Source: Tubulanus polymorphus (Eukaryota; Animalia; Nemertea). From it: 64,000 nucleotides of DNA. Made by a program: the position numbers and the translations under genes. The stretch is from NCBI RefSeq assembly GCF_964204645.1, contig NC_134036.1:5362600-5426599 (forward strand). The letters are read 5' to 3'. Below, piece after piece: positions 2 through 64,000 of this stretch (position 1 is its first letter; each line of letters begins with the position of its first letter). Under the pieces are notes generated by a model. That model had not been told where the DNA came from. It saw only the letters and a program-made list of their open reading frames with translations, and did no database searches.

Positions 2-2959
2 ATGAGTTCAACAAAAAATAACAAATCTTTGATACGGGAAAACATGTCAAAAGATAATAGTTGCACGGTTGGATGGTTACGTATGAATAAACAATGCTAT
101 CAAATACTGACAGACTGGAAAAATCATCGAGGTTTGGATATAAAAATTGCAACTGAGATGTGTCGAGACATCCGAGGTGAAATAGGCGAGATATTAACTG
201 GTTACACAGAAAAGAAAACTTCGAACTTGATAAGAACATTTCAATATCAACATCAATATAGCTCTATCCTAACGATGGCATCTAATGACCGACTGCAAGT
301 TATAAACCCAATAATCACTAGAGATGAAATTACTTATATTAAATCAGTCAAATGGACGACGAAACAGTTCGATAATGCGACAGATACAGCGCATTCTGTT
401 TTGTGTTCCTACAATGTAACTGTTGAAGAGTTAGCTTCTGTAAGCGGTTGTAAATCGTGGCAGTTTAAATGTAACGATCAAAGGTGTATCAGCGACCAAC
501 GCGTATGTGATACCAGACACGACTGTCAACACGGTGAAGATGAACTCAATTGTACGGATATCAATTTACACAGTCAGTTTCAATGCAAAGATAGTCAGAT
601 TATATCAATAAGTGGATTCTGTGATTTCATACAAGATTGTGCGGATGGTTCCGACGAGAAATCGTGTTTTCATCCCCCGTGTTTGTCCGGAGAATTCCGC
701 TGTATCAGTGGTCAATGCGTCATCAGGTCAAACAGATGTGACGGTGTTGCTAATTGTAAAGACGGATCAGATGAAATCGAATGCATTGCTGAAATGTGTC
801 AGGGGTTTCTGTGTAACAGTGGAGACTGTCTTAGTTCTCAGTTGTATCAGGATGGTGTCGTGGATTGTAGTGGAAGCCTTGAAGAAGATGAATTAGTAAC
901 AACTATTAATTTTACAGTGAATCCTACTGTTCTTTGTAATACTGAAAACGACTGTACGACTAACTTCACAAATCTCTGTACAGAATCTGATGAACAAAGA
1001 TGTTCTTTCGATTCTCCTCACTGTTATTCTAGACGTCACAGATGTATTCTAGAAAGAATGACGAATACTTTCCCAGTTTGTAGAAATCTTGAGCACGTAT
1101 TGAGATGTGAAGAATTCGAATGTCCAGCTGGTACTGTAAAATGCCCAGCATCGTACTGTATCCCGATCAGACAGGTGTGCGATGGTCAGTCGGATTGTCC
1201 TAATTCAGAAGATGAGCAAAACTGCGAGACATTTTCATGTCCAGGAATGTTTAAATGTGGCAACGAAAATAGATGTATTACACAATCTGAAGTTTGCGAT
1301 GGTGTCGTAAATTGTAAATATACAACTGATGACGAGGCTTTCTGTAACGTCACCTGTCTGAGAGGTTGTAAGTGTCAAGGTCATCTGACCGAGTGTAGAA
1401 ATACTGGTTTAACAAACATTACCGGTCTTTTCTCGGCATCAACTCGAGTTTTAATTTTGTCGAATAACGAAATTACCTTAGACATGTCGACATTCCTTTC
1501 ATATATCTATTTGCGCATGCTCAACATCTCCGCCAATGAATTGTCTTATATTTCACCTAAATCGTTCTCAAACCTGCATAATCTACATACATTAGATCTT
1601 ACACACAACAACATAACATCATTACCTGCAAAAACATTCATCGGTTTGTATAGTTTGAAAGAGTTATTGATTACTGAAAATCCAATACGTCATTTACACG
1701 ATGATACCTTCCAAGATTTGAAGTCACTTAAAGTTCTCGACCTTCACGAACTTTCGTTGTTGGTGCTTGGTAGAAACGTATTTCGAGGTTTATCTACATT
1801 ACAGTCGTTGAATATCAGCAATAACAGAATCCATCATATTTCGCTTTACGCATTTTCTGGATTAACTTCACTTGAAATTCTTGATATAACCAACAACTAC
1901 AAAGTTATTTCTGTCGACAGAAATGTTTTCAACAATCTGACATCATTGGTCTCCTTAAAGTCTGATGCTCACAAATTTTGCTGCATGTCTCCGAATGTTG
2001 ACCAGTGCCTACCGGAAGCTGATCAATTTTCCTCCTGTTCTGATCTGATGGGTAACACAGTCCTCAGAGCTATCATTTGGGTCATTGCTTCATTCAGTTC
2101 CATCGCTAACGGAATTGTCATTTCACTTCGCTTTCGAGCGATTCGATATTCCTTCTCAAATCCATCTTCAGATATCATCATCATTAATGTTGCTGTTTGT
2201 GATTTCATGATGTCTATATATTTGTTTCTGATCGCTGGAGCCGATTACATTTATTCTGGCATTTACTTTCTAAATTCGGAATTATGGATGGATAGTCCAT
2301 TTTGTCGTCTTGCTGGGATCACGGTGTCTATCTCTTGTGAAGGTTCATTGATATTTTTGCTCATCATGACACGTCATAGGTTCACAAATATCGTTAATCC
2401 ATTTTCAGGAAGTGCAATTACATCTCCTAGATATGTGTGCGCTATTTGCTGCACATCTTGGATTATTTTGTGTGCTATTGCATTGCTACCTCTAACACCT
2501 ATCCCTTACTTCGGAAACAATTTTTACGGTACAACCGGAGTTTGTTTACCTATGAATCTAATTTCAATCGATGTCAATGCCTGGCAATATTCATTCGCTA
2601 TTTTTTCATTATCCAACTCCTTCATACTTACTACGATAATGGCGACTTATGCGCAAATGTACCGACTCGTTTCAGGAAGCAGGTCTGGTTCTGGTAGAAT
2701 TGACCCTACAGAACTGATTTTGGCACGTCGGAGTTTGGTGATTAATCTTTGTAATTTATTTTGCTGGCTGCCGTTAATTATCGTTCAGTTTTGCGCGGTA
2801 TTTCGGGTTGAAATACCGAATCAGGTGGCGGCTTGGCTGGCGGTTCTTTTTTTACCGATCAACTCGTCCCTCAATCCCCTTCTTTACACAATACTGACTA
2901 TCGATATGAAATCCATACGAGCAAAAACTAAACGCAGGCAACATCGAACGAATAAATGA
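2..2959 (+). CDS. GRL101-like: Copy 1, 5'-truncated by the window (terminal exon only): GRL101-like LDLa-LRR-7TM GPCR
   Basis: Degenerate CTLD, LDLa repeats (CDTRHDCQHGEDELNC, CDGQSDCPNSEDEQNC), LRRNT, LRRs, hinge KFCC...DQFSSCSDLM, and 7TM with CWLP and LPINSSLNPLLY. Homologous to exon 3 of the downstream copies. Confidence 0.93.
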   Translation: MSSTKNNKSLIRENMSKDNSCTVGWLRMNKQCYQILTDWKNHRGLDIKIATEMCRDIRGEIGEILTGYTEKKTSNLIRTFQYQHQYSSILTMASNDRLQVINPIITRDEITYIKSVKWTTKQFDNATDTAHSVLCSYNVTVEELASVSGCKSWQFKCNDQRCISDQRVCDTRHDCQHGEDELNCTDINLHSQFQCKDSQIISISGFCDFIQDCADGSDEKSCFHPPCLSGEFRCISGQCVIRSNRCDGVANCKDGSDEIECIAEMCQGFLCNSGDCLSSQLYQDGVVDCSGSLEEDELVTTINFTVNPTVLCNTENDCTTNFTNLCTESDEQRCSFDSPHCYSRRHRCILERMTNTFPVCRNLEHVLRCEEFECPAGTVKCPASYCIPIRQVCDGQSDCPNSEDEQNCETFSCPGMFKCGNENRCITQSEVCDGVVNCKYTTDDEAFCNVTCLRGCKCQGHLTECRNTGLTNITGLFSASTRVLILSNNEITLDMSTFLSYIYLRMLNISANELSYISPKSFSNLHNLHTLDLTHNNITSLPAKTFIGLYSLKELLITENPIRHLHDDTFQDLKSLKVLDLHELSLLVLGRNVFRGLSTLQSLNISNNRIHHISLYAFSGLTSLEILDITNNYKVISVDRNVFNNLTSLVSLKSDAHKFCCMSPNVDQCLPEADQFSSCSDLMGNTVLRAIIWVIASFSSIANGIVISLRFRAIRYSFSNPSSDIIIINVAVCDFMMSIYLFLIAGADYIYSGIYFLNSELWMDSPFCRLAGITVSISCEGSLIFLLIMTRHRFTNIVNPFSGSAITSPRYVCAICCTSWIILCAIALLPLTPIPYFGNNFYGTTGVCLPMNLISIDVNAWQYSFAIFSLSNSFILTTIMATYAQMYRLVSGSRSGSGRIDPTELILARRSLVINLCNLFCWLPLIIVQFCAVFRVEIPNQVAAWLAVLFLPINSSLNPLLYTILTIDMKSIRAKTKRRQHRTNK

Positions 2960-4840
2960 AATAGCGCAGAGTGGTTGGTATATATCGCCAGTCAAAACGA
3001 TCTTTCGATTTAATTTTCTGTCGGGGATATTTTATGATAAATCATCATTCTATACACTATACACCCCCTCCCTCTCATTTTTGCGTTGTTCACTTTTCAC
3101 AGTTTTTTTTCGCATGCAATAAATTTGTTACATGTATTCAATTACTGGATATCATTAACGTGTCAATACGTGCAATGGATGTATGGAGTATTAAGCGTTA
3201 CACACGGGTTACAGCTTTCAATTCGGGTCGCTGTATCTCCTATACACTCAACACTCAATTGAAACACTCCTGGTTGAAAGTATTTCAGTACTGACCATAC
3301 CCACAGTACCGTACCCACAGTAGGGCACTATAGCAGGTAACAAAAAATATATGTTCATGCTTAATATATGGGCACCTGGGTGACCTACATAATAAATAAT
3401 AAAATGCGAATATCCTACCAATTGCTATACATAGCCTGTTATTCTTTTCTGCAGTGTGTTCTGATGATTATCTGAGAATTTGATGGTAAAATTTCCCGTT
3501 TGGCGAAAACATTATGGCTGATTTAATGTAGCAAGGTAGTCATTGCAATTAGAGAAATATACCAAATAATATTGATCGAAACGTCTGTAGGTGCATAGTA
3601 GCTGAAATACTCAAGGTTTTGCGATAGATGGCGCATTGGTATCAAGTAGATCCTCTACGAAAATGCGAGTCACCGGTGACCGCGTACCATGTTACGAAAG
3701 GGTTGAATGTATCTTTCATCATTATCGTTGAAGATAGACTAAACAGTTCGATAAAAGTACGAAGGCATATTTTGAAAGACTGAATATATTTGATGTCATT
3801 TTCGAGAAGTGCGCTCCCGGACACTGGTTTAATCCCGATAGTTATGATCAATCGATCCGATTCTTACGCAGGATATTTTAAATTTCTGGTTCGGTTCGAA
3901 ATCCTGGCTCAGTAGATACGTCAAACCTGGTACTCGATACCACAGTTCGAAACCCGTCTTTGTATAAAGTGCGCACATAGTTTATATCCGAAACGTTGTT
4001 TGAATTCATGAAATAAAAGCAAATCTCAATTTGTGTTTAATGTTGTTGTATTTACTGCGTGTTTTATTGGACAGTTTTTCCCTACCAATCAGTTCTTTTT
4101 CTCTATTATTTAAAGTCATTAACGCGAATTTAGACGATTTCACTAAGTGGTAACCGTTTGATTTGATCCATCGCTGGTCACAGAGACAATTAAGACGAAA
4201 CTATTATGAATACATCCAAATATGAAATTAAATGCGTAATAACAGATTTTTACAAAATAGCTCTATCGGTTAAACTGCAGCGTCGATAATGTAATGCGTC
4301 GCGATTATCAAGGTTTAAGAGTACATTCAATATAGAAATAGTTTAAATCTGCACAAATCAACTACTTAACCGGGTATTAATGGGGTATTAGTTGCGTTCT
4401 AAGATGAAAAGTTCCCGATCAGTGAGGCACATTGTGTGTTACGTGTATTATGAAAGTGTTCTTTTGTCGGAATATTACGTCCACCCGTTTCTATAAGGAG
4501 ACTATATGATTGCTATGTCATTGAATATGTCTCATTCTTACAAATTTTGAAATTATCAAATATGCTTTTATCTGTTAAAAAAGGGCGTCCTTACGACCGT
4601 CAGGGGCTCGTACTTTAACATGATATCGTGTGTATTGTAAGCCTTTAGGCGGGTTTTACTAAAGATGATAATATGAAAAACTACTCCGAAACTCACTAAG
4701 TAACGGTTTAGGTTCCAGCAATAAAAATACATGAAGCGGGATAAGATTTTCTAGTGAAAATTTTGTTTGATTTCAAGGAATCCTAGTGATTTTACCCGCT
4801 ATTGAATGAAACGCTAGACATATTTCAGACCACGACTTCA

Positions 4841-8194: not shown

Positions 8195-11100
8195 ATGTTG
8201 TTCGGTATGGAGCAGCGACTGAGAGCGCTGTTTATAGCGACGCTGATCGTCTGTCAAGTTCACATCGCGCGCACCGATCGAGCCGACTCTATCGAGGAAT
8301 CGTCTGTGACGGTAAGTTCGTCTTGTAACAACACGTGGTACCCGCTAGATTCTACGTCCGGTTACATCGTTTCACCGAATTACCCGGCGTTAACGCGCGG
8401 TGTTGAATGTCGTTGGTTCATCAACAGCTCTTTACCTAAGACTTTCAACGTCCAAGTTTACTACAACATCGAACCGTCAATATTCTGTAGTGATAACTAC
8501 TTTCTCGTCTACGAGTATGATAACAGATTGTGCGGCGATGGAAAATATGAAATCCGCCGTAACGATTCGATCTCGTTGATGTTTAGGAGTAACGTCGATG
8601 GTGCGCGAGGTAGTCTGGTTTATATCACATATCGTTATGAACGAAGCCGATTGAGAATCAGTCATAACGGCAGGAAATATAATTGCGATTTGAATAAATT
8701 GCAAACGTCGGAGGGATACAAATACAAAATAAAAAGGCTAGTGGGTTGCCGGTTGTACCTGGAATGGATCGGGATGCCTGATGGTTTTGCTCTTAACTTG
8801 ACTTTTACAAAATTAGATTACAGAATATCCTCTCTCATTGCACCAATAACAGTCAACGACGGATCGAACATCAGCAGTGAACCTATAGGTATTATACGAG
8901 AACAAACCGGATATCCACCTTCGTCATTTTATACTAAAACAAATAAAGCCATAATCTCGTCGCTACATCGCCCAAGGGTGTTTCGATCGCAGCTTTTAGT
9001 TCAGAAGTACAAAATATCAGATTGGAACGTTTCTAATCCGTTGATTCAGATCTCTAATAACGAGTCGGGAGTGCTTATACCCGATGACAACAGTTTACAC
9101 GTGATAACTCGATCAAAACACTTACACTGCTGGTCCATCACAGTGCAGGTGTTACAGTACGTCGTCTTCAACTGGACACGTGATCTAGTCTCGTCCGGTG
9201 ACGTCATCGGTGTATATATACAAGAAGGGCTACGCTTTGTGGGAACTGATATCTTACTCGGATACAACTACATGGAATCACTGAGTGTCAAATCTGACGG
9301 CTTTCTTGTTGTACTATGCGCTCTGAAAGCTACACTTCACGATAATGTAACATTTGAAATAAACTATAAAAAAGAATTTATTTCGATGGAGAACATAAAG
9401 GTCTTCAACCCTCGGGTGAGTTAAATGCGTGAAATTATTTTACTCCGTATCAAAATAATTGAAGTAAACAAATATTTATGATGCACTTAAAATGGGCTTT
9501 TTATGTCTAGGTATCGGTGAACGCAATGTGGTCCATGACGCCGTTCATGCTGTTTCCAACACGAGCAAAGCTCTATTTGAATTATCGCATCAATAGATGC
9601 GAGTTTAAATGGAAAACTGAGATTTATGAACAGAATATGGAACTAACAGTTTTATCAGAGAACTGCGAGCGAGCTGGATTTTACATATTCGACGGTGGTA
9701 ATTTCACGGCTAGACGATACGGTCCGTATTGTCCTCGTTTATGGAGATACGGCCGTAACGTCGTCAGTCTGATTACATCAGGTGGATCGGTTACTGTAGT
9801 GGGATACGCTTATAACTGGGATGATCAATTAACAGTTGATAAGAAATCACGCCTCACATTTCGTACTACCGACTGTGATGGGTATGTCTTAAAGGAGGGA
9901 GAACGTCGGATCAACACGTCGTCTGACTGCGTTTCGATAACACCTGAAAACCGACGCCTTCCGTTAAAAAACATTTACATTTGGTCCAAACACGAATATC
10001 TACTTGATTCTTGTATTGTCGATGAAAGGTTCCACACCAGTAGGTGCATGTTTCGACTCAACTTCCATTCTACCAATAACGGACTTGTTTTACAAACGGT
10101 GGATTTTAGGTATGTAAGACCCTTCCGCGTGGAGCCGTTGTTTGTGAAACTACGCCGTAAATGTATGACATTGAAAACGCCCGATAAGCTCACAGATATA
10201 ACATGGCACACACCGGAATGCGGGTTAGTGCAGTCAATGAACTATCCCGGACCAGAATTCGACGAATCAGTCCGTAGAAAATACACTTTAGAATTCAGAC
10301 CTAATCTGTTACAGATTCGATTTTACAGATTCGTTTTCAAATACATTCAGGTAATACCCTGCGAGAAATCGTCCCGGAGAGATAGGGATCCTATTTTGTT
10401 TATACAAAATATATATCATTACATAACTACCGGGCGTGTAGAGACTCAATACACAACAACAATATGCGGTAAAATGGCCGTATTGGGAACTGTATTTTAT
10501 AGCTTGCATCACAAGATGCACTGGTTTCAGGTGGAAAATAATATACCCACATTTCAAATACAATACACCGTTATACGGTCTTTACAAGCGACACAGTTTG
10601 AAAATGTCTGTAAATCAGGATTTCTAGATTCGGGACTTTCCTGCGTAAAATACATCAGAGATGAACGTTTGAATTGGGAGAATGCTGAATTGTATTGTAG
10701 ACAGAAGTACGCGGGACATCTACTCAGTATCAACTCGGAACAGGAAATGATTCACATTAAAATATTATTCGCTACAAAGTTTCTTCAAAAGGCGTATTCA
10801 CAAAAAGCGCTCATAATGATGATTGGATTAAAACTGCAGGTAAATTTCAAAACCGTTGTTAAGTTCTATTTTTGTAAATATATTGTTCCAGAAGTTTATG
10901 CTTTTTTGTTTCGTAGCCCAATACCGGTTATTACACGTGGTCAGATGGGAAACCATTAAGCTACACAGAGTGGTATAAACCTACAAATAACGACACGATA
11001 CCAGAAGTTATTCAAGGATTGATATCTCCTCTCAGAAAACAACCGATCAATGACGTCAATATGCCGTGCACAGCGATGATACTGAATAATCCACGAGGAT

Positions 11101-14100
11101 CAGCGAACTGGGTTCGATTCCCCTGCAAAATCGAAGAGGTTCACACGAGTTTCATCTGTGAAACAGAAATAATCGATATCGAAAATAGAACATCTAGCAC
11201 GATAAATTCAACAAACAATGGCAAATCTTTGATACGGGAAAACATGTCGAAAGAAAGTAGTTGCACGGTTGGATGGTTAGGTATGAATAAACAATGCTAT
11301 CAAATACTGACAGACTGGAAAAAACATCGAGGTTTGGATATAAAAACTGCGACAGAGATGTGTCGAGACATCCGAGGTGAAATAGGCGCGATAACTGGTT
11401 ACACAGAAAAGAAAACATTGAACTTGATAAGAACATTTCAATATCAACATCAATATGGTTCTATACTAACGATGACTCCTGATGACAGACTGCATGTTAT
11501 AAACCCAATAATCACTAGAGATGAAATTACTTATATTCAATCAGTCAAATGGACGATGAAACAGTTTGATAATGCAACAGATACAGCGCATTCTGTTTTG
11601 TGTTCTTACAATGTAACTGATGAAGAGTTAGCTTCTATAAGCGGTTGTAAATCGTGGCAGTTTAAATGTAACGATCAAAGGTGTATCAGCGACCATCACG
11701 TATGTGATACCAGACACGACTGTCAACACGGGGAAGATGAACTCAATTGTACGGATATCGATTTACACAGTCAGTTTCAATGCAAAGATGGTCAGATTAT
11801 ATCAATAAGTGGATTCTGTGATTTCATACAAGATTGTGCGGATGGTTCCGATGAGAACTCGTGTTTTCATCCCCCGTGTTTGTCCGGAGAATTCCGCTGT
11901 ATCAGTGGTCAATGCGTCATCAGGTCAAAGAGATGTGACGGTGTTGCTAATTGTAAAGACGGATCAGATGAAATCGATTGCACTGCTGAAATGTGTCAGG
12001 GGTTTCTGTGTAACAGTGGAGACTGTATCAGTTCTCAATTGTATCAGGATGGTGTCGTGGATTGTAGTGGAAACCTCGAAGAAGATGAATTAGTAACAAC
12101 TACTAATGTTACAGTGAATCCTACTGTTCGTTGTAATAATGAAAACGACTGTGCGACTAACTTCACAAATCTCTGTACAGAATCAGATGATCAAAGGTGT
12201 TCTTTCGATTCTCCTCATTGTTATTCGAGACGTCACAGATGTATTCTAGAAAGAATGACGAATGGTTTCCCAGTTTGTAGAAATCTTGAGCACGTGTTGA
12301 GATGTGAAGAATTTGAATGTCCAGCTGGCACTGTCAAATGTCCAGCATCATACTGTATACCAATCAGAAAGGTGTGCGATGGTCGATCAGATTGTCTCAA
12401 TTCAGAAGATGAACAAAACTGTGAGACTCTTTCATGTTCGGGAATGTTTAAATGCGTCCACGAAAACCGATGTATTCCACAATCTGAAGTTTGCGATGGC
12501 GTCATACATTGTAAACATTCAACTGATGACGAGGCTTTCTGTAACGTGAAATGTCGTGAAGGTTGTTACTGTCAAGGTCATATGATCGATTGTAGAAATA
12601 CCGGTTTAACGAACATTACCGGTCTTTTCTCAGCCTCAACTCGAGTTTTGATTTTATCAAATAATGAATTAACCTTAGAAACGTCGACATTCTTTTCATA
12701 TGTATATTTGCGCATGATCAACATCTCCTTTACCAGATTGTCTTATTTATTACCAAACTCGTTCTCAAACTTGCATAATCTTCATACATTGGACCTGACA
12801 TACAACAACATAACATCATTAACCGCAAATACATTCACTGGTCTGTATAGTTTGAGAGAGTTATTCATAACTGAAAATCCGTTGCGTCAATTAGAGGATG
12901 ATACATTCCGAGATTTGAAGTCCCTGAAAAATCTCGACCTACACGGACTTAGGTTGTTGGTGCTTGATAGAAATGTATTTCGCGGTTTATCTACATTACA
13001 GTCGTTGAATATCAGCGGTAACAGAATCCATCATATTTCGCTTTACGCATTTTCTGGATTAACTTCACTTGAAATTCTTGATATTACCAACAACTACAAA
13101 GTTATTTCTGTCGACCGAAATATTTTAATTAATCTTAATTCATTGGTCTCCCTAATTTCTGACGATTACAAATTTTGCTGCATGGCTCCAAACATTGACT
13201 ACTGCCTTCCTGAAGCTGATCAATTTTCCTCGTGTTCTGATCTGATGGGTAACACAGTCCTCAGAGCTATCATTTGGGTCATCGCTTCATTCAGTTTTAT
13301 CGCTAACGGAATTGTCATTTCTCTTCGTATTCAAGCGATACGATTTTCCCCCTCAAATCTCTCTTCAGACATCATCATCATTAATGTTGCTTTGTGTGAT
13401 TTTATGATGTCTATTTATTTGTTTCTGATCGCTGGAGCCGATTATCTTTATAAAGATGATTACTTTCTCTATTCCGAATCATGGACAGACAGTTTGTTTT
13501 GTCGTCTTGCTGGGATCACGGTGTCTATTTCATGTGAAGGTTCATTGATGTTTTTGCTCATCATGACACGTCATAGGTTCACGAATATCTTAAATCCATT
13601 TTCAGGAAGTGCAATTACATCTACGAAATATGTGTGTATTATTTGTTGTACATGTTGGATTGTCTTGTGTGTCATTGTATTAGTACCTCTCACACCTTTC
13701 CCTTACTTTGGAGACAATTTCTACGGCACGACCGGAGTTTGTTTACCGATGAATTTGATTTCAATCGATGTGAATGCCTGGCAATATTCTTTCGCTATTT
13801 TTGCTATGTTTAACTCTGGCATACTTGCAACGATAATGGCGACTTATGCGCAAATGTACAGACTCGTATCTGGAAGCAGGTCTGTTTCTGGTAGAGTTGA
13901 TCCTACCGAACTGATTCTGGCGCGCAGGAGTTTGGTGATAAATCTGTGTAATCTATTTTGCTGGCTGCCGTTAATAACCGTTCAGTTTTGCGCGGTATTT
14001 CGGGTGGAAATACCGAATCAGGTGGCGGCTTGGCTGGCGGTTCTTTTCTTACCGATCAACTCGTCCCTCAATCCCCTTCTTTACACAATACTGACTATCG

Positions 14101-14156
14101 ATATGAAGTCCATACGAGCAAAAACAAAACGCAGGCAACATCGAACGAATAAATGA
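8195..14156 (+). CDS. GRL101-like: Copy 2: CUB/CTLD-extended GRL101-like GPCR, 3 exons, ~1929 aa
   Basis: Exons 8195-9415, 9511-10839, 10917-14156. Intron 1 is 9416-9510 (cgg|GTGAGT...tgtctAG, 95 bp); intron 2 is 10840-10916 (cag|GTAAAT...tttcgtAG, 77 bp). Both are phase 0. Splicing restores a continuous CTLD (IGLKLQ|PNTGYYTWSDGKPLSYTEW). Hydrophobic leader MLFGMEQRLRALFIATLIVC. Confidence 0.9.
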
Positions 14157-25600: not shown

Positions 25601-25632
25601 AAACTAAACGCAGGCTTCATCGAAAAGATTGA
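19698..25632 (+). CDS. GRL101-like: Copy 3: CUB/CTLD-extended GRL101-like GPCR, 3 exons, ~1922 aa
   Basis: Exons 19698-20903, 21000-22325, 22396-25632. Introns 20904-20999 (96 bp) and 22326-22395 (70 bp), GT-AG, phase 0. Start placed at the second conserved ATG (MEQRL) because the first is ACG. Ends RLHRKD. Confidence 0.88.
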
Positions 25633-39796: not shown

Positions 39797-39917
<121 letters not shown>

Positions 39918-39940
39918 TTAGTTATATGTACTCGGTTAAG

Positions 39941-40030
39941 CGAATTTTCTGATAGGATGAAATCGGATCATGATCCGACCAATGACGGATTCTGTGAAAC
40001 TTGACGAATTTCGTTCATTCTGTCGCAGTG
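39941..40030 (+). promoter_or_regulatory. Putative core promoter of copy 5 (upstream CCAAT box mutated)
   Basis: ATAGG instead of ATTGG at 39952, CCAAT at 39979. Lies about 25 bp after a (TA)n tract. Confidence 0.45.
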
Positions 40031-46000: not shown

Positions 46001-46025
46001 ACGCAGGCTTCATCGAAAAGATTGA
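40031..46025 (+). CDS. GRL101-like: Copy 5: CUB/CTLD-extended GRL101-like GPCR, 3 exons, ~1937 aa
   Basis: Exons 40031-41263, 41367-42701, 42780-46025. Intron 1 is 41264-41366 (aga|GTAGGT...atatAG, 103 bp; a donor/acceptor pair both shifted +4 would also keep frame). Intron 2 is 42702-42779 (78 bp). Ends RLHRKD. Confidence 0.86.
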
Positions 46026-47919
46026 CAAGATAGTTTTAGACTCACCCAAAACAGCTTCCTAGTAGTACAATTCAGTCAGTACGATTTTTCGATTTCGTTG
46101 CCTGGTCGGGATATATCGTTTTAGAACATCATCCTTAACGTAAGACAACAATCTGAAAAATATATAGATAATCTTTCACAGTTTTATTTTTCACGTGTAA
46201 TTTTTCTAATTTTCTGAATTTACTCGATCACTTTATATCGACAACTTCTCGATATTTACAATGGATGTATGGACGATAAGACCCAGGTTTTAACCCTTTC
46301 GTTGGGGCATATTTATATTGCTTACGATTTCTATGTGGGAATGAATCCTCTTTTTTTGTTTTGACTTAAGCGTTTTGTATTGACTTAATGAAAAAAGACC
46401 CCGAAATGATATATCCATTCTGAAGCTAAGTTAGTAGAAACAACCGGAAATCTGGGTAAGCAGTGACCTAGATCTTGAGGTCAAATTTAGGTCACGCCTT
46501 TGTTTACATGAATTAGTTTGCTAATAGAAAACATTGCTAGCTCGCCGATGAGGTTTGAGCAGCCGGTTGGACTAGTTTAATATCTAGTGGAAATTAGGTT
46601 AGTAGGCCAAGTGTCGACTGTCAGGTGACTACGTCAAACATATCACATCTTTACGCTTTATGTGACGAAGATATAAAGCTTTCGGGTCGGGTGGTGGTAA
46701 GTGTAGAATCGCAAAAATTCGAAGTATATCAAAGTGTCCCATAAACTCCTTTAACTCACTTCTTGTGACAGTGGCAATAATGCACTTTCCGAAAAATGTG
46801 CTTACTTTTTGCTTTTTGAAAGTGAGTTTTTAGAGCGTCTGTATCTCGATACTGCGCTACAAGAACAATGACCAACGGGTAGACACCCAAGGAGCAACTA
46901 TTGCTCGTATGGACTCGACACACGATAGAGTCACTGTGTCAGGAACCCTTATCGCTCCCGTGCGGAGAGTGGGGATGCCCGACACGGTAACAAGTATCTC
47001 ACTAAATTGATTGTACCTACGGCGCAGTAACGAAACACGGGCAAACTCTCTTTCACAAAGTGTGAAAAGCATCTTTAGAAAGTGTATTATTCATCGTCAT
47101 TACCGCTGGACGTATCGGCCCCACTCCGCGCGGTTGCGCCACCGCGCGGGATTTACGCGAAGCAGCAGAACACAAACATGGCCACTCTCTCAATTTTCAA
47201 TGATAGAAATCGTGTGTGCATTTCAATTATTTCGGCTGTTTGGGTTTTAAGGCACAATATAAGTTGATGATGCGATATGGCTATGTTAATTAATGATAAT
47301 TCCGCAGTGAAGCTAGTCACGAACGGTGCCGATTGAGTGTACAGCTGCCAAAAACACTGAAATGTGCATAGTTGCGTAACTATTTGCAGTGAATTGCAGA
47401 CGAAACATGAAGCCTTAACGGACGTTTAAAAAAAAATTATACCAATCGCAATTGTAAAATAAAAATGACATAGAACCTAAGTTAAAATTCTGGCCATTTC
47501 TAAAATATTATTACTAATTTTTAGTCAGGGCCGAACGTTTAGTTTTCCTACAATAATGAGGCGTGGTAGGTAGTCATGCAATTCAAGTCATCATTTATTA
47601 CACGTTACTTCCGTGTTGTTGAAAATCTCGCGAGTCCTGGACCAAACCCCAATAAACAATGTGATCTGTGTGCTGGCCACAAATGCACACAGATCACACT
47701 ACACTACCCATTAAACACTCCAGTACCCACAGCTTTCATATATCCATCCAAATATTTAGAGTGGATGATAGATAACAAGTGCACACGAATTGATTGTATG
47801 ACATATCACATGATATCGTCACGCTTTATGCGACAAAGACGTAAAGCTTTCGGCCGGGTGGTAGTAACGGCTAGTTTAGTTTGAGCTCTTTTTTGAAGAA
47901 TCTAATCTATAAAAGATCG

Positions 47920-49618: not shown

Positions 49619-52600
49619 ATGTTGTTCGGTGTGGAGCAGCGACTGAGAGCGCTGTTTATTTCGTCGCTGATCGTCTGTCAAATTCGCATCGCGCGCGCTG
49701 ATCGCGCAGATTCTATCGAAGAATCGTCTGTGACGGTAAGTTCGTCTTGTAACAATACGTGGTACCCGCTAGATGTTACGTCCGGTTACATCGTTTCACC
49801 GAATTACCCGTCGTTCACGCGCGGTGTTGAATGTCGTTGGTTCATCAACAGTTCTTTACCAGGAACTTTCTTCATCCAAACGAAATTCGATATCGAGCCG
49901 TCAATATTCTGTAGTGATAATTACTTCCTCGTCTACGAGTCTGATAACAGATTCTGTGGTGATGGAAAACATGAAATTCGCCGTAACGATTCGATCTCGT
50001 TGATGTTTAAGAGTAACGTCGATGGCGCACGAGGTAGTCGGGTTTATGTCATATATCGTTATGATCGAAGTCGATTGAGAATCAGCCACGGATGCGGGAT
50101 CTGGAATTTTAAAGAGCACGAATTGGAAACATCGACCGGATACAAATTCACGATGTTCTTTCATCACGGATGTCAGCTGTTCGTCGAATGGAACGGCATC
50201 CCGGATGGTTTTGCTATGAATTTAACATTCGTTGATCTGGACCTTAAACTATATTATTTCGGTGGCGTCGATCCAGCGGTGAATTTTCGTATCTATGAAG
50301 GCTGGAACATCAGCAGTGAGCCGATAGCGCTTATAGGTGCACAGAGCGGACAACAGCCGTCATCGTTTTATACCAAAACAAACAAGGCATTGATTTATGT
50401 GTCAAATCAACGCAAAACAACGACTAAACTTTTAGTACAGATTTATAAAATATCAGATTGGAACGTATCTAATCCGTTGATTCAGATCTCTAATAACGAG
50501 TCGGGAGTGCTCATTCCCGATGACAACAGTTTACACGTAATAACTCGATCAAAACACTTACACTGCTGGTCTATCACAGTGCAGGTGTTACAGTACGTCG
50601 TCTTCAACTGGACACGTGATCTCGTCATATCCGGTGACGTCATCGGTGTATATAAGTTAGAAGCGTTGCGCGTTGTAGGAACTGATATTTTACTCGGTTA
50701 CAACTACCTGGAATCACTGAGTGTCAAATCTGACGGCTTTCTCGTCATGCTGTGTGTTTTAACGAGACCGAACACCACGGAATCGATTCTAAGGATAGAC
50801 TTCAGAATGAAATCAATATCGATGTCTAAATTGCGCATCATTCTACCCAGAGTAGGTATCAGATCATTGGTGCACTCATATTTACACTCCATCGACGGAG
50901 ATTCGCAGCTATGATTACTAACGAAATGAATTATTCTTTTGCTCAAATATATAGATAGACAACAGATTCAAACTGTTTACAAAGTCGATGGAATCTTCTT
51001 CGCTGCTTCCATTTCCGACAAGGAAGTTGAATTATCGCGTCAACCTGTACAGATTCAAATGGAAAGTTGAATTCTACGAACGAGATCTACAATTGAAAAT
51101 GGTGTCTGTGAATTGTGAAAATACCGGATACTACGTATACGACGGTGGTAATTTCACGGCTAGACGATACGGTCCGTATTGTCCTCGTTCATCGGGTTAT
51201 CGACGAAGTGTCGTCAGTCTGATTACATCAGGCGGTCCGGTCATCGTAGTAGGCTATATTTATAACAGTCGAAGCAAGCAACGGAGGGCCAGCGGATCTT
51301 TAAAGTTAGGTCCGACCGACTGTGACGGTTATACTCTGCGTGAAGGAGAAAACCGGGTAAGTATGCAGACGCCACGCTGTTTCAGGATTACACCAGAAAA
51401 CCGAGCAGTTTTACTATATAAAATTCACATATTATCACATCACGAATATGAGATCAGCGGATGCATGCGCGATCACACAACATCGCGCACAGCATGTAGA
51501 TATCAAATGCGTCTCAGTATTCAGCGTCTCAATAACAGTCTCGTACTGCACACTGTCGCATTTCGGAGGGCGGATTTTTTCTGGATAAGACCGTACTTCG
51601 TCGAATTGCGGCGAATTTGCCAAACATTGAGAAAACATGAAGCAATAGCTGACCGGTGGGAGCGAACTGAAGGCGATTGCGGAATTGTGCAGTCACCAAA
51701 CTACCCAGGGTCATCTAGAACTCTATCCGTCACGTTGGAATACTGGATCAATTTCAAAAATGTTAAGACCCGAATTCACTTTTACCGATTCGTCATCAAA
51801 ACAATGGAAAAGACGTCGTGTATTAAGGAATCCAGATACAAGCTGGAGTCCGTCGCGTTCGTCCAGGAAGTCAGTTACCAGAGCCGCACTGCCCGACACG
51901 TTATCAAACTATGCGAAACGTTTGCCGAACCGGGAGTTACGTTTTACAGTTATATTTTTATTAAGATGCGCTTCGAGGTGAAAAACCGAGTACCCAAATT
52001 TCGCATACAGTACGTACTAGAGGAACAGTTACCAATAAAACAGATTGAAAATGTCTGTAAAACAGGATTTATTGATACGGGAATCACTTGCGTAAAATAC
52101 ATCAGAGATAGACGTCTGAATTGGGAGAATGCTGAATTGTACTGTAGACAGAAATACGCGGGACGTCTACTCAGTATCAACTCACAACAGGAAATAATGT
52201 CTATTAAAACATTATTCTCTACAAGGCCGCTCATCTCAGATGTGTATTCCCAGAAAGCGTTCATAATGATGATTGGGTTAAAACTGCAGGTACAGTACTG
52301 TATTCTAGCCCATAACCTTAACTGTACATAGAACACATTCGTAAATGTCCGAGGGTTACATTTTCAGCTTGTAAGTGGTTATTACACGTGGACTGATGGA
52401 AAACCATTGAGCTACACAGAGTGGTATCAACCTACAAATAACGACACGATACCAGAAGTAATTCAAGGATTGATATCTCCTCTCAGAAAACAACCGATAA
52501 ATGACGTCAATATGCCGTGTACGGCGATGATATTGAATAATCCACGAGGATCAGCGAACTGGGTTCGATTCCCCTGCGGAATCGAAGAGGTTCACACGAG

Positions 52601-55600
52601 TTTCATTTGCGAATCGGACAGAATAAGTGTCAAAAATTTAACTGAGAGAGAAAGCAACTCAACCAATAAGGCGTCATCCGAAACTAATAAACAACACATT
52701 TTTAATTATAATACAGTAAATGCAACTTGTACAATGGGTTGGTTAGGTATAGCTGGGAAATGTTACCAAATACTGACAGATTGGAACAAAAACCGAAGTT
52801 TAGATATTGGGAAATCAAGAAAACTGTGTCATGGAATCCGCGGTGAAGTCGGTTTGATACAGGATCTGATGCACCTTCAAATATTGATTGGTAGATTTAA
52901 TTATCGGCACCACTATGGCGCTATTCTAACTATCGGTTTTTGGAATCAATGGTTGAAAATAAAACCATTTGTTACCAGGGATGAAATTACTTATGATCAT
53001 TCGATTGACTGGGCATTGATACCGTGGTATAATCAATCAGATACAGTGCATTCTGTTCTGTGTTCATACAATGTAACTGATGAAGAGTTAACTTCTATAA
53101 GCGGTTGTAAATCGTGGCAGTTTGAATGTAACGATCAAAGATGTATCAGCGACCATCGCGTATGTGACACCAGACACGACTGTCGACACGGTGAAGATGA
53201 ACTTAATTGTACGGATACAAATTTACACAGTCAGTTTCAATGCAATGATGGACAGATTATATCAGTTAGTGGTTTCTGTGATTTCATACAGGATTGTGTG
53301 GATGGTTCTGATGAAAACGCATGTTTTCATCCTCCGTGTTTGTCCGAACAATTTCGCTGCCAAAATGGTCAATGTATCAGTATTTCTAAGAGATGCGATG
53401 GATTCACTGATTGTAAAGACGGCTCCGATGAAATTGGATGCACTTCTCAAATGTGTCAAGGATTCCTGTGTAACAGTGGAGACTGTATCAGTTCTCAGTT
53501 GTATCAGGATGGTGTCGTAGATTGCAGTGGAAGCCTCGAAGAAGATGAATTAGTAACAGCTACTAATGTTACAGTGAATCCTACTGTTTATTGCAACAAT
53601 GAGAACCACTGTACGACTAACTTCACTAATTTCTGCATTGAATCTGATGAACAAAGATGTTCTTTCAATTCTCCTCATTGTTATTCAAGACGTCACAGAT
53701 GTATTCTAGAAAGAATGACGAATGGTTACCCAGTTTGTAGAAATCTCGAGCACGTGTTAAGATGTGAAGATTTTGAATGTCCAGCTGGTACTGTAAAATG
53801 TCCAGCATCGTACTGTATACCGATCAGACAGGTGTGCGATGGTCAGTCAGATTGTCCTAATTCAGAAGATGAACAAAACTGCGAGACGTTTTCATGTCCG
53901 GGAATGTTTAAATGTGGCCACGAAAATCGATGTATCCCACAATTTGAAGTTTGCGATGGTGTCATAACTTGTAAACATAAAACTGATGACGAGGCTTTCT
54001 GTAACGTAACCTGCCGTGAAGGTTGTGTGTGTCAAGGTTATTTGATCGATTGCCGAAATGCTGGTTTAACAAATATTACTGATCTTTTCTCGGCATCAAC
54101 TCGAGTTTTAGTTTTGTCGAATAACGAAATTACCTTAGACATGTCGACATTCCTTTCATATATCTATTTGCGCATGCTCAACATCTCTTCCAATGAATTG
54201 TCTAATATTTTACCTAAATCGTTCTCAAACCTGCATAATCTACAGACATTAGATCTTACACGCAACAACATCACATCATTATCTGCAAATACATTCATCG
54301 GGTTGTATAATTTGAAAGAGTTATTGATTACTGAAAATCCAATACGTCATTTAGAGGACGAAACCTTCCAAGATTTGAAGTCACTTAAAGTTCTCGACCT
54401 CCACGAACTTTCGTTGTTGGTGCTTGGTAGAAACATATTTCGAGGTTTATCTTCATTACAGTCGTTGAATATTAGCAGTAACAGAATCCATCATATTTCG
54501 CTTTACGCATTTTCTGGATTAACTTCACTTGAAATTCTTGATATAACCAACAACTTAAAAGTTATTTCTGTCGACAGAAATGTTTTCCACAATCTGACAG
54601 CATTGGTCTTCGTAAAGTCTGATGCTTACAAATTTTGCTGCATGGCTCCGAATGTTGACACGTGCCTTCCTGAAGCTGATCAATTTTCCTCCTGTTCTGA
54701 TCTGATGGGTAACACAGTCCTCAGAGCTATCATTTGGGTGATCGCTTCATTCAGTTTTATCGCTAACGGAATTGTCATTTCTCTTCGCATTCGAGCGATT
54801 CGATTTTCCTCCTCAAATCCTTCTTCAGACATCATCATCATTAATATCGCTGTGTGTGATTTTATGATGTCTATATATTTATTTCTGATCGCTGGGGCTG
54901 ATTATACTTATAAAGGTATCTACTTTCTCAATTCAGAATCATGGACGGACAGTGCATTTTGTCGTCTAGCTGGAGTCGTGGTCACTATTTCTTGTGAAGG
55001 TTCGTTAATGTTTTTGCTCATCATGACACGTCATAGATTCTCAATTATAGTTAATCCATTTTCTGGAAGCCCGATTACATCTCCGAGATATGTGTGCATC
55101 ATTTGTTGCACATGTTGGATCGTTTTGTGTGTTATTGCATCGCTACCTCTTACGTCTATCTCTTACTTTGGGGACAATTTCTATGGCAGAACTGGAGTTT
55201 GTTTACCAATGAATTTAATTTCAATTGACGTCAACGCCTGGCAATATTCATTCGCTATTTTTTCATTATCCAACTCATTCATACTCGCTACGATAATGGC
55301 GACTTATACGCAATTGTACCGACTCGTATCTGGAAGTAGGTCTGGCTCGGGTCGAATTGACCCTACAGAACTAGTTTTGGCACGCAGGAGTTTGGTGATA
55401 AATCTTTGCAATTTATTTTGCTGGCTGCCGTTAATTATCGTTCAGTTTTGCGTGGTATTTCGGGTAGAAATACCGAATCAGGTGGCGGCTTGGCTGGCGG
55501 TTCTTTTCTTACCGATCAACTCGTCCCTCAATCCCCTTCTTTACACAATACTGACTATCGATATGAAATCCATACGAGCAAAAACTAAACGCAGGCAACA

Positions 55601-55616
55601 ACGAACGGATAAATGA
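49619..55616 (+). CDS. GRL101-like: Copy 6: CUB/CTLD-extended GRL101-like GPCR, 3 exons, ~1938 aa
   Basis: Exons 49619-50851, 50955-52289, 52368-55616. Introns 50852-50954 and 52290-52367. All splice sites sit exactly 9588 bp from those of copy 5. The second conserved ATG is GTG here. Confidence 0.86.
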
Positions 55617-60803: not shown

Positions 60804-63800
60804 ATGTTGTTCGGTATGGAGCAGCGACTGAGAGCGCTGTTTATAGCGTCGCTGGTCGTCTGTCAAGTTCGCATCGCACGCGCTGATCGCGCAGCCTCTA
60901 TCGAGGAATCGTCTGTGACGGTAAGTTCGTCTTGTAACAACACGTGGTACCCCGTAGATTCTACGTCCGGTTACATCGTTTCACCGAATTACCCTTCGTT
61001 AACGCGCGGTGTTGAATGTCGTTGGTTCGTCAACAGCTCTTTACCGGGGACTTTTCACGGCCTAGTTTACTACGATATTGAGCCGTCATTATTCTGTAGT
61101 GACAACTATCTATTTGATGATGCGGAAATCTTATGCGGTTACGGAAAATACGAAATCCTTCGTAACGATTCGATCTCGTTGATGTTTAGGACTAACGTCG
61201 ATGGTGCGCGAGGTAGTCGGGTTCATGTCATGTATCGTTACGAACGTAGCCGGTTGAAAATCAGTCACACATGCGGGAGATCGAATTTTGAAGTGATTGA
61301 ATTAAAGACATCGACCGGATACAAATTCACCATGTACTTTGAATTTCTATGCCTGTTCTTCATTGAATGGATTGGCCTCCCCAATGGATTGGCAATGAAT
61401 TTCACATTCGTAGGTTTGGACCTTAGACTATATTCTGGTCCAGGTGCCAATCCAGCCACGCTTTTTCGAATCTATGATGGCTGGAACACCAGAAGTGAAC
61501 CGATAGGGCTTATAGGTGTACAAAGCGGACAACAGCCGTCATCGTTTTATACTAAAAGTCACAAAGCCACATTTTTCGTGTCGGATCAACGCAGGACAAC
61601 GACTAAACTTCTAATTCGGACTTACAGAATATCAGATTGGAACGTCTCTAATCCGTTGATTCAGATCTCTAATAACGAGTCGGGAGTGCTCATTCCAGAT
61701 GACAACAGTTTACACGTAATAACTCGATCAAAACACTTACACTGTTGGTCTATCACGGTGCAGGTGTTACAGTACGTCGTCTTCAACTGGACACGTGATC
61801 TCAACACATCCGGTGACGTCATAGGTGTATATAAACTAGAAGGGCTACGCGTTGTAGGAACTGATATTTTACTCGGTTACAACCACCTGGAATCACTGAG
61901 TGTCAAATCTGACGGCTTTCTCGTCATGCTGTGTGTTTTAACGAGACCGAACATCACAGAATCGACTGTTAGAATAGACTTCAGAATGAAATCAATGTCG
62001 ATGTCAAAAATGCGCATCATTAGACCCAGGGTAGGTATCAAAATAATTTTGCTCGCAGATTTAAACTTCATCGACGGAACTTCGTAAATATGATTTCGAA
62101 CTGATAAAGATAATTATTTTTGTTTTTTTTACGAACCCCTAATAAACAGATAGACAAAAGACTCAAACTGTTTACGAAGTCGCTGGCATTTTGGTCGCTG
62201 CTTCCGTTTCCGACAAGGAAATTGAATTATCGTGTCAACCTGTACAGATTCAAATGGAAAGTTGAAATCTATGACGGTGATCTACAATTTCACATGCTGT
62301 CTGTAAATTGTGAAAATGCTGGGTTCTACATCTATGACGGTGGTAATTTCAAAGCTAGACGCTACGGTCCGTATTGTCCCGCTAAACCGCGTTACGGACG
62401 AAGTGTCGTCAGTCTGATAACATCAGGCGGCCCGGTCATCGTAGTAGGCTACATTTATAACAGTAGAAGCAAGGAACGGATGGCCAGCGGATCTCTAAAG
62501 TTACGTCCGACCGACTGTGACGGTTATACTCTGCGTGAAGGAGAAAACCGGGTAACAATGCCGCAGACGCCACGCTGTTTCAGGATTACACCAGAAAACC
62601 GAGCAGTTTTACTACAAAGCATTCACATATTATCACAGAGCGAATATGAGATCAGCGGATGCATGCGCGATAACACAACATCGCGCGCAACATGTAGATA
62701 TGAAATGCGTCTCAGTATTCAGCGTCTCAATAACAGTCTCGTACTGCACACTGTCGCATTTCGGAGGGCGGACTTTTTCTGGATAAGACCGTACTTCGTC
62801 GAATTGCGGCGCATTTGCCAAACATTGAGAAAACATGAAGCAATAGGTGACAGTTGGGAGCGAGCTGAAGGCGATTGCGGAATCGTGCAGTCACCAAACT
62901 ACCCGGGATCATCTAGAACGTTGTCCGTTACGTTGGAATACTGGATCAATTTCCACAATGTTATGACCCGAATTCACTTTTATCGATTCGTAATCAAAAC
63001 CATGGAAAAGGCGCCGTGCATCAAGAAATCGCGTTCCTCACTTGAGTCCGTGGCGTTCGTCCAGGAGGTAAGATACCGGAGTAGCACTGGCAAATACGAC
63101 ACTGCCAGCCACGTTGTGAAACTATGCGAAACGTTTTCTGAACCGGGAGTTACGTTTTACAGTTTTATATATGCTGGGATGCGGTTCGAGGTGAAAAACC
63201 GAGTACCCAAATTTCGCATACAATACGTTCTACATGAGCGGTTACCAATAAAACAGCTTGCAAATGACTGTAAATCAGGATTTATCAATACGGGAATTTC
63301 TTGCATAAAATACATCAGAGATGAACGTCTGAATTGGGAGAATGCTGAATTGTACTGTAGACAGAAATACGCGGGACATCTACTCAGTATCAACTCAGAA
63401 CAGGAACTAGTTGCTATTAAAACATTATTCTCTACAAGACCGCTCATCTTAGAAGTGTACTCACAGAAAGCGCTCATAATGATGATCGGGTTAAAACTGC
63501 AGGTAGAGTTCTGTATTCTAGGCCATACCTTTGTATGTTGATGAACGCGTTCGTAAATATCTGAGGGTTACTTTTTCAGCTTGCAACTGGTTACTACACG
63601 TGGACGGATGGTAAACCATTGAGCTACACAGAGTGGTATAAACCTACAAATAACGACACGATACCAGAAGTTATTCAAGGATTGATATCTCCTCTCAGAA
63701 AACAACCGATAAATGACGTCAATATGCTGTGTACGGCGATGATACTGAATAATCCACGAGGTTCGGCGAACTGGGTTCGATTCCCCTGCGAACTCGAAGA

Positions 63801-64000
63801 GAGTCACACGACTTTTATTTGCGAATTGGACAGAATAAGTGTCAGAAATTTAACTGAGAGAGAAAGCAACTCAACCAATAAGTCGTCATCCGAAACTAAT
63901 AAACAACACATTTCTAATTATAATACAGTAAATGCAACTTGTACAATGGGTTGGTTAGGTATAGCGGGGAAATGTTACCAAATACTGACAGATTGGAACA
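60804..64000 (+). CDS. GRL101-like: Copy 7, 3'-truncated by the window: CUB/CTLD-extended GRL101-like GPCR
   Basis: Exons 60804-62030, 62150-63502, 63580->64000. Introns 62031-62149 (119 bp) and 63503-63579 (77 bp). The exon 3 frame (LATGYYTWTDGKPLSYTEW...CTMGWLGIAGKCYQILTDWN) is open to the window end. Confidence 0.85.

What the first reader, a model, noticed from the sequence alone, without database searches (positions are those of the whole stretch)
2..64000. Paralogues are combinatorial mosaics with modules shuffled between copies
Seen: copy relationships change along the gene. Exon 1 groups {2,3} vs {4,5,6,7}. Exon 2 groups {2,3},{4},{5,6,7}. The second CTLD groups {1,2,3},{4},{5,6,7}. 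LRRs group {2,3} (LTLETSTFFSYVY) vs {1,4,5,6} (ITLDMSTFLSYIY). The 7TM groups {1,4} (YIYSGIYFLNSELWMDSPF), {2,3,5} (YLYKD.YFLYSESWTDSLF) and {6}. Tail plus 3' flank groups {3,5} (RLHRKD) vs {1,2,4,6} (RQ.RT.K). For example, copy 5 has a copy-6-like ectodomain, copy-1/4-like LRRs and a copy-3-like 7TM and tail. Inference: repeated unequal crossover or gene conversion recombines recognition modules with signalling modules, a germline diversification mechanism like that of immune-receptor clusters.
Basis: partly seen in the sequence, partly recalled or inferred. Interest (0 to 1): 0.85.

Follow-up and report, generated by a model that had tools for sequence, protein, structure and literature searches.

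The report
Mosaic receptor genes in tandem array
Seven neighbouring copies of a giant GRL101-type receptor gene in a ribbon worm really are patchworks of one another, made by repeated recombination between copies. This is the usual way tandem gene families evolve, and nothing yet shows it is a purpose-built diversity generator.

Summary
The window (Tubulanus polymorphus, C12:5.36-5.43 Mb) holds 7 of 11 tandem three-exon genes for CUB/C-type-lectin/LDLa/LRR/7TM receptors of the GRL101-like, type-C LGR kind.

- **One tree does not fit:** the PHI test gives z = -25 to -85. Each of five gene segments rejects the ML trees of the other four (AU p <= 1e-5). 48 of 78 pairs share significantly long identical tracts. 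Four-fold-site divergence is heterogeneous along every pair tested (p 3e-3 to 8e-9).
- **Copy 5** is D-like (like copy 6) up to 44601, A-like (like copies 1 and 4) over 44657-45000, and C-like (like copy 3) from 45017 through the tail and 3' flank. It then stays collinear with an upstream block into the next genes, which points to a crossover.
- **Copy 1** carries a 1.5-kb A-type LRR/7TM patch in a B-type gene.

The recombination inference is supported. The "immune-like diversification mechanism" part is not shown: dN/dS is below 1 in all but one pair/class comparison (hypervariable 0.45-1.09, constant 0.17-0.25), and the breakpoints lie in conserved stretches inside exon 3, not at domain or intron boundaries. 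The read test of the junction was inconclusive. The scan has noted this family, and mosaicism in it, elsewhere in this genome.

The parts
1..2959 (+). Copy 1 (c1), exon 3 only; exons 1-2 lie upstream of the window. B-type up to 1010, A-type LRR/7TM patch from about 1099 to 2632, mixed tail. Exon 3 has a frameshift just at the window's left edge.
8207..14156 (+). Copy 2 (c2), intact. Exons 8207-9415, 9511-10839 and 10917-14156. B-type throughout, with a type-A tail and flank. Near-twin of upstream copy cB.
19698..25632 (+). Copy 3 (c3), intact. Exons 19698-20903, 21000-22325 and 22396-25632. C-type, with the type-B tail RLHRKD* and a type-B flank.
28574..34563 (+). Copy 4 (c4), intact. Exons 28574-29785, 29902-31227 and 31306-34563. 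It has its own (A-related) ectodomain, and an A-type LRR/7TM that is 97-100% identical to c1's.
40043..46025 (+). Copy 5 (c5), intact three-part mosaic. Exons 40043-41263, 41367-42701 and 42780-46025.
39919..44601 (+). c5 segment that is D-like (closest to cD, c6 and fX): signal peptide, CUB region, CTLDs, LDLa repeats and the first LRRs.
44657..45000 (+). c5 segment that is A-like (matches c1, c4, cA and fX at 12 consecutive diagnostic sites): the C-terminal LRRs.
44984..45016 (+). c5 A-to-C breakpoint interval of 33 bp, at about residues 735-745 of exon 3: the end of the LRRs, before the hinge and TM1. This junction is unique in the assembly; the next best locus is 94% identical.
45017..47143 (+). 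c5 segment that is C-like (closest to cC and c3): hinge, 7TM, the RLHRKD tail and the type-B 3' flank. Collinearity with the upstream block runs on through c6 into c7.
49631..55616 (+). Copy 6 (c6), intact. Exons 49631-50851, 50955-52289 and 52368-55616. D-type throughout, with a type-A tail. Near-twin of upstream copy cD.
60816..64000 (+). Copy 7 (c7). Exons 60816-62030 and 62150-63502; exon 3 starts at 63580 and runs beyond the window, where it has a TAA and a frameshift. It is the last gene of the array, and its 3' flank is unlike any other.

Best explanation
The window is part of an 11-gene head-to-tail array of GRL101-like (type-C LGR) receptor genes. The paralogues have repeatedly exchanged sequence by homologous recombination in the germline. 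Two kinds of event are visible. Unequal crossovers make hybrid genes together with block duplications. Shorter gene-conversion tracts run from tens of bp to about 1.5 kb.

Exchange happens where copies are still alike, in 'constant islands' and in the LDLa/LRR/7TM half of exon 3. As a result, deeply diverged N-terminal ectodomain types (B, C, A, D) are now joined to a small number of LRR/7TM/tail types.

Shown: the mosaic structure, its statistical significance, the breakpoint intervals, and purifying selection on the products. Inferred: the molecular mechanism (crossover or conversion), and that the mosaics are mainly a by-product of array dynamics rather than a selected diversity generator.
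For: - PHI z = -25 to -85, with 0 of 300 permutations reaching the observed value.
- Five segment trees are mutually rejected at AU p <= 1e-5. High bootstrap support places c1, c5 and fX/fY in different clades in different segments.
- Diagnostic-site painting gives sharp switches. c5 goes D to A to C at 44601/44657 and at 44984-45016. c1 goes B to A at 1010-1099. fX and fY go D to A.
- 48 of 78 pairs share significantly long identical tracts.
- Four-fold-site divergence is heterogeneous along every pair tested, p 2.8e-3 to 8e-9. It flips for c1: against c2 from 0.09 to 0.24, and against c4 from 0.34 to 0.06.
- Blocks at 95-96% identity link [cB-cC] with [c2-c3], and [cC 3' part, cD, c1 5' part] with [c5 3' part, c6, c7 5' part].
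- The type-B tail and flank occur only behind cC, c3 and c5 in the whole genome.
- Mosaic copies differ by 1-6% from every candidate parent on both sides of a junction. The same D-to-A mosaic is present at two loci, fX and fY.
- ORFs stay open across junctions, and dN/dS is 0.1-0.8.
Against: - No single read or contig was shown to bridge the c5 junction. Half of the Illumina reads were only partly laid, and paralogues cross-map.
- Two reference bases beside the junction (44967 C, 45067 A) were seen in no run.
- The alignment of the hypervariable exon 1/2 parts is uncertain, though the key conflicts lie in well-aligned exon 3.
- Crossover cannot be strictly separated from a long conversion tract for c5.
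Confidence: 0.85

Rival explanations
1. Adaptive combinatorial diversification. Selection maintains the exchange because new pairings of hypervariable CUB/lectin recognition cassettes with LRR/7TM signalling cassettes widen a recognition repertoire (immune or chemosensory), as in plant NLR, KIR or MHC clusters.
For: - Ectodomain segments differ to synonymous saturation between types, while flanking blocks are homogenised.
- One A-type LRR/7TM module (97-100% alike) sits behind four different ectodomain types in two arrays.
- The family is very large: 812 first-look candidates, and about 270-290 genes according to earlier notes.
- A cluster of CTL-LDL-LRR-GPCR genes lies in a schistosome-resistance region of a snail (PMC12297450).
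- dN/dS is about three times higher in hypervariable than in constant parts.
Against: - dN/dS does not exceed 1 beyond noise: 0.45-1.09 in hypervariable parts, above 1 in one pair only, on 4 synonymous differences.
- Breakpoints fall where sequence identity permits, not at domain or intron borders.
- About 4 of 13 copies carry disabling changes.
- There are no expression, ligand or population data.
- Once diverged, segments escape conversion without any selection, which gives the same picture.
Confidence: 0.2
2. Assembly artefact. The chimeric junctions are switches between collapsed paralogues or haplotypes made by the assembler.
For: - The c5 junction is unique in the assembly.
- No bridging read or contig was displayed.
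- Reference bases 44967 C and 45067 A are unsupported in four runs.
- The public run that holds the stretch best has only 46% of its sampled 31-mers.
Against: - Both halves of each mosaic differ by 1-6% from every other copy in the genome, so they are not pasted from assembled loci.
- The parents share only a few tens of bp, about 33-80, of near-identity at the c5 junction, too little for a long-read assembler to join on.
- The D-to-A mosaic is present twice, in fX and fY, with later divergence.
- c5-specific 3'UTR sequence (46017-46172, 0 differences) is present at single-copy-like depth in run X1.
- Depth across the junction in the independent Illumina run X5 is continuous.
- There are no Ns, and the frames are intact.
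Confidence: 0.05
3. No recombination. A single duplication tree, with strong rate differences or convergent evolution between regions, mimics mosaicism.
For: Evolutionary rates do differ strongly along the gene: the ectodomain is fast and the 7TM slow.
Against: - Topologies conflict, not only branch lengths; AU rejects at p <= 1e-5.
- The conflicts are seen at four-fold degenerate sites.
- The conflicts extend into non-coding 3' flanks.
Confidence: 0.01

Closest known systems
GRL101 (Lymnaea stagnalis) and GRL101-like / type-C LGR receptors, relaxin receptor RXFP1
   Same: LDLa repeats, LRR ectodomain and a rhodopsin-type 7TM. The best solved full-length relative is RXFP1, 7tmw, E 1.6e-75. The nearest named homologues are 'GRL101-like', some with CUB and Lectin_C domains.
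   Different: Here there is a roughly 1,000-residue N-terminal extension (a CUB hit, two C-type-lectin-like regions and unassigned beta-rich sequence). The gene has three giant exons. The family runs to hundreds of copies in one genome. The ligand is unknown.
SudRes2 cluster of CTL-LDL-LRR-GPCR (GRL101-like) genes in Biomphalaria sudanica (PMC12297450)
   Same: A dense tandem cluster of the same architecture in a structurally variable region. The authors proposed a recognition or immune role.
   Different: That paper reports presence/absence and truncation differences between haplotypes, not mosaic exchange between paralogues. I found no paper holding both 'GRL101' and 'gene conversion'. The nemertean family is much larger and adds CUB-type sequence.
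Mosaic evolution of tandem gene families by unequal crossover and gene conversion: red/green opsin and globin hybrid genes, KIR and MHC genes, plant NLR clusters (from general knowledge, not tested here)
   Same: Hybrid genes at duplication junctions, conversion tracts of 0.1-2 kb, homogenised 'constant' blocks beside old divergent blocks, and pseudogenes mixed into the array.
   Different: For those systems, selection on new combinations or disease consequences are documented. Here only the sequence footprint is shown.

Membership tests
GRL101-like / type-C LGR GPCR | Rhodopsin-family 7TM domain | tested here: met
   PF00001, E 6e-17 (c2) and 2.3e-17 (c5), both above the curated cut-off.
GRL101-like / type-C LGR GPCR | Extracellular LRR region directly before the 7TM | tested here: met
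   LRR_8, E 1.8e-28, residues 578-735 of c5 exon 3. LGR4, LGR5 and RXFP1 matches in the PDB.
GRL101-like / type-C LGR GPCR | LDL-receptor class A repeats N-terminal to the LRRs | tested here: met
   PF00057, E 3.5e-33, 6 stretches in c5.
GRL101-like / type-C LGR GPCR | Closest named relatives belong to the family | tested here: met
   Homologues at 29-38% identity are named 'G-protein coupled receptor GRL101-like' (Haliotis, Octopus, mites), some with CUB and Lectin_C.
CUB/C-type-lectin-extended GRL101 subgroup | Recognisable CUB and C-type lectin domains in the N-terminal part | tested here: inconclusive
   CUB scores 25.1 bits against a 21.4 cut-off in c5, but 20.5 in c2. Lectin_C scores 22.2 against 22.6, because the domain is split by intron 2 and the exons were searched apart. 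AlphaFold models were poor (pLDDT 48 and 34) and gave only weak tandem-CUB fold hits.
Paralogue mosaics made by gene conversion or unequal crossover | Phylogenetic incongruence between adjacent segments | tested here: met
   AU p <= 1e-5 for all 20 cross-segment tests.
Paralogue mosaics made by gene conversion or unequal crossover | Excess compatibility of neighbouring sites, and significant shared tracts | tested here: met
   PHI z = -25 to -85. 48 of 78 pairs have p <= 0.002 in a GENECONV-style permutation.
Paralogue mosaics made by gene conversion or unequal crossover | The signal is present at silent and non-coding sites | tested here: met
   Heterogeneity at four-fold sites, p 2.8e-3 to 8e-9. 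The c1 flip. Two unalignable 3' flank types.
Paralogue mosaics made by gene conversion or unequal crossover | Junctions verified on single molecules | tested here: inconclusive
   Only short reads and de Bruijn contigs were on hand. Depth is continuous, but paralogues cross-map.
Immune-receptor-like diversifying cluster (NLR/KIR/MHC type) | Positive selection on recognition segments | tested here: not met
   Pairwise dN/dS is 0.45-1.09 in hypervariable parts and 0.17-0.25 in constant parts; none is significantly above 1. Site-level models were not run.
Immune-receptor-like diversifying cluster (NLR/KIR/MHC type) | Immune expression or induction, and copy-number or combination polymorphism between individuals | not testable with these tools
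No RNA run held the stretch.

The most novel reading that the evidence does not exclude
The ribbon worm's roughly 270-290 giant GRL101-like receptors form a germline-encoded recognition repertoire. Old, hypervariable CUB/lectin cassettes are kept distinct by selection. They are re-paired, by recombination at conserved 'constant islands', with a few LRR/7TM signalling cassettes. This would be a GPCR-based counterpart of NLR- or KIR-type combinatorial diversification.
Probability: 0.2. Interest if true: 0.7.

Novelty: new member of a known kind. Interest (0 to 1): 0.42.

Why it matters
The finding gives a clean, quantified example of how a very large lineage-specific receptor family is built. 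Block duplication, hybrid genes from unequal crossover and conversion tracts join ancient divergent ectodomains to shared signalling halves.

There is a practical warning. Gene trees, orthology calls and dN/dS scans for this family, and probably for GRL101-like clusters in snails that are linked to parasite resistance, are invalid unless they are done per recombination block.

If the exchange proved to be selected, it would add a GPCR family to the short list of germline combinatorial recognition systems. That step is not shown here.

Tried and rejected
- **Read-level test of the c5 junction**. One Illumina run from another sample and three contig sets were laid on 42500-48000 at >= 97% likeness. 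Depth was continuous, but half the reads were only partly laid and paralogues cross-map. No bridging record was listed, so there is no verdict. Runs X2 and X3 lack depth in the 3' flank, which I first read as RNA. Their depth ratio to X1 is about the same in the flank piece they do hold, so I make no expression claim.
- **Private mutations at the junction.** A cluster of c5-private bases beside the junction looked like recombination-associated mutation. With 33 copies there is no enrichment, so I dropped the idea.
- **Structure prediction** of the exon 1 and exon 2 translations from 14-row alignments gave pLDDT 48 and 34. Foldseek gave only weak tandem-CUB-like hits with TM below 0.3. These are not used as evidence.
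- **Peptide gene in the spacer.** I looked for a small cysteine-rich peptide gene in the c4-c5 spacer, a lead from earlier notes about knottin cassettes. No such ORF is present.
- **Full event-by-event history** of the 11 genes: not attempted beyond the main blocks, because there are too many overlapping events.
- **Genome paper.** I searched for a T. polymorphus genome paper to document the sequencing technology and found none in the library.
- **Spliced model.** It was searched exon by exon by reference.
Full report
**What is in the window.** The 64-kb window is G000:C12:5362600-5426599 of the ribbon worm Tubulanus polymorphus. The species name came from earlier notes and was confirmed by a T. 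polymorphus protein among the best hits. The window holds seven head-to-tail copies of one gene, each with three very large exons.
- GT-AG introns of about 80-180 bp are conserved in all copies.
- In copy 5 the exons are 40043-41263, 41367-42701 and 42780-46025.
- Searched exon by exon, Pfam finds a CUB domain in exon 1 and the start of a C-type lectin domain at the end of exon 2. Exon 3 has six LDLa repeats, LRRs (residues 578-735) and a rhodopsin-type 7TM (800-1059).
- The best solved full-length relative is the relaxin receptor RXFP1. Named homologues are 'GRL101-like'.
- Copies 2-6 are intact. Copy 1 has a frameshift at the window's edge. Copy 7 has a TAA and a frameshift beyond the window.
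- I sent no joined (spliced) protein to any search tool.

**The array is larger than the window.** A whole-genome search gave 812 first-look candidates; earlier notes put the family at roughly 270-290 genes. The local array has 11 genes: four more (cA, cB, cC, cD) lie upstream, and copy 7 is the last. I fetched the rest of the array, two close relatives about 0.75-0.85 Mb away (fX, fY), and later 20 more copies.

- Sliding-window identities and a partition map at >= 93% identity show the groupings changing along the gene as described.
- One correction: in exon 1, copies 4 and 7 are separate lineages rather than members of a {4,5,6,7} group.

**Statistics.**
- The PHI test gives z = -25 to -85, and no permutation out of 300 reaches the observed value.
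- I built ML trees for exon 1, exon 2, CTLD2+LDLa, LRR and 7TM. They place c1, c5 and fX/fY in different, well-supported clades. Each segment's alignment rejects the other four trees (AU p <= 1e-5 in all 20 tests).
- A GENECONV-style permutation finds significantly long identical tracts in 48 of 78 pairs, spanning 30-600 bp of perfect identity.
- Divergence at four-fold degenerate sites is heterogeneous along every pair tested (p 2.8e-3 to 8e-9). For example, cD against c5 jumps from 0.03-0.14 to 0.40 in the 7TM.
- For c1, silent divergence flips. Against c2 it goes from 0.09 to 0.24, and against c4 from 0.34 to 0.06, at about window 1010-1099.
- Rate variation or protein-level convergence therefore cannot explain the pattern.

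**Anatomy of the mosaics.** Diagnostic-site painting gives the following.
- c5 is D-like (cD, c6, fX) over 39919-44601 and A-like (c1, c4, cA, fX) over 44657-45000. It is C-like (cC, c3) from 45017 through the stop codon to at least 47143.
- The A-to-C switch lies within 44984-45016, at the end of the LRRs.
- c1 is B-like up to 1010, A-like from about 1099 to 2632, and then mixed. It is an internal patch of about 1.5 kb, as expected of gene conversion.
- fX and fY share one D-to-A switch, so that mosaic predates their duplication.
- One A-type LRR/7TM module (97-100% alike) now sits behind four different ectodomain types in two arrays.
- Mosaicism is also seen in other arrays, for example in L020 and L023.

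**Crossover or conversion.**
- Megablast blocks at 95-96% identity link [cB to cC flank] with [c2 to c3 flank]. They also link [cC exon 3, cD, c1 5' part] with [c5 exon 3, c6, c7 5' part].
- So c5's C-like part is collinear with its flank and the next genes for about 16 kb. That is what an unequal crossover making a hybrid gene predicts.
- The type-B tail and flank exist only three times in the genome, behind cC, c3 and c5. The type-A flank is common.
- Short tracts and the c1 patch fit conversion. These mechanistic assignments are inferences.

**Where breakpoints fall, and selection.**
- The resolved breakpoints lie inside exon 3, in stretches where the parental types are nearly identical. 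They are not at introns or exact domain borders. The 'modules' are approximate.
- Synonymous divergence between ectodomain types is saturated in parts of exons 1-2 and in CTLD2. It falls to 0.1-0.3 in three 'constant islands' where all 13 copies are >= 93% alike.
- Within young pairs, dN/dS is 0.45-1.09 in hypervariable parts and 0.17-0.25 in constant parts. Only cC-c3 exceeds 1, on 4 synonymous differences. This indicates weaker constraint, but positive selection is not demonstrated.
- The picture fits homology-dependent exchange, with diverged segments escaping homogenisation. It does not exclude selection for new combinations.

**Is it an assembly artefact?**
- The c5 junction is unique in the assembly; the next best locus is 94% identical.
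Half the reads were only partly laid, paralogues cross-map, and no bridging record was listed. Reference bases 44967 C and 45067 A were seen in no run. This test is inconclusive.
- Against an artefact, both sides of each mosaic differ by 1-6% from every other copy. The parents share only a few tens of bp, about 33-80, of near-identity at the c5 junction.
- A c5-specific 3'UTR piece (46017-46172) is present without differences at single-copy-like depth in run X1. The D-to-A mosaic occurs at two diverged loci. All frames stay open.
- I put this rival at about 5%.

**Comparison with what is known.**
- Tandem clusters of CTL-LDL-LRR-GPCR 'GRL101-like' genes are published for Biomphalaria, where one lies in a schistosome-resistance region (PMC12297450).
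- A chemosensory role has been suggested in a triton snail (PMC13403566).
- No paper in the library holds both 'GRL101' and 'gene conversion'.
- Mosaic paralogues made by unequal crossover and conversion are textbook for opsins, globins, KIR/MHC and plant NLR clusters (general knowledge).
- The scan had already noted this family, and a mosaic pair, on other DNA of this genome.

**Verdict.** The 'immune-like diversification mechanism' is unproven. This is a new, well-documented member of a known kind.

Noticed in passing
L008, L009 and L017 (G000:C12:6.14, 6.24 and 6.28 Mb, minus strand): Inverted relatives about 0.75-0.9 Mb away are very close to array members. L017 matches cA at 96-99% over exon 1 to LDLa. 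fX and fY match cD and c6. This suggests an inverted segmental duplication of part of the array, or exchange between arrays.
   Followed up: partly
L022 and L024 (G000:C12:6.13 and 6.46 Mb): These loci align only over the LRR/7TM part (98-99.8% to c1, fX and cA); the upstream sequence is unalignable. They may be truncated LRR-7TM-only genes or gene fragments.
   Followed up: no
window 47100-47835: A high-copy repeat in the short c5-c6 spacer. Illumina depth is about 460-1200, against about 20 nearby, with many internal joints and loose ends. It is probably a transposable element family.
   Followed up: no
window 39766-39921: A long (TA)n-type microsatellite lies directly upstream of copy 5. 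Homology between c5 and c6/cD begins just after it, at about 39941.
   Followed up: no
window 40906-41155, 43481-43730, 45731-45980 (c5 coordinates): Three 'constant islands' where all 13 compared copies are >= 93% identical, and synonymous divergence drops to 0.1-0.3, between segments that are saturated. They are candidate recombination substrates, or nucleotide-level constrained elements.
   Followed up: partly
window 1-20; L003/L004 (cC exon 2); L006 (c7 exon 3); L008 (fX exon 2): Disabling changes in 4 of 13 copies: a c1 exon 3 frameshift, a cC exon 2 frameshift, a c7 TAA plus frameshift, and an fX stop. Pseudogenes are interleaved with intact genes and still take part in exchange.
   Followed up: partly
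window 46026-46900 and 55617-56500: There are two unalignable 3' ends. Type B (tail RLHRKD*) occurs only three times genome-wide, behind cC, c3 and c5. Type A follows most family members in both arrays. The switch point is 5-6 codons before the stop.
   Followed up: yes
window 34600-39950: The long (about 5.4 kb) c4-c5 spacer has no convincing ORF and no cysteine-rich peptide gene. Even so, parts of it are 77-93% conserved with the other long spacers.
   Followed up: partly
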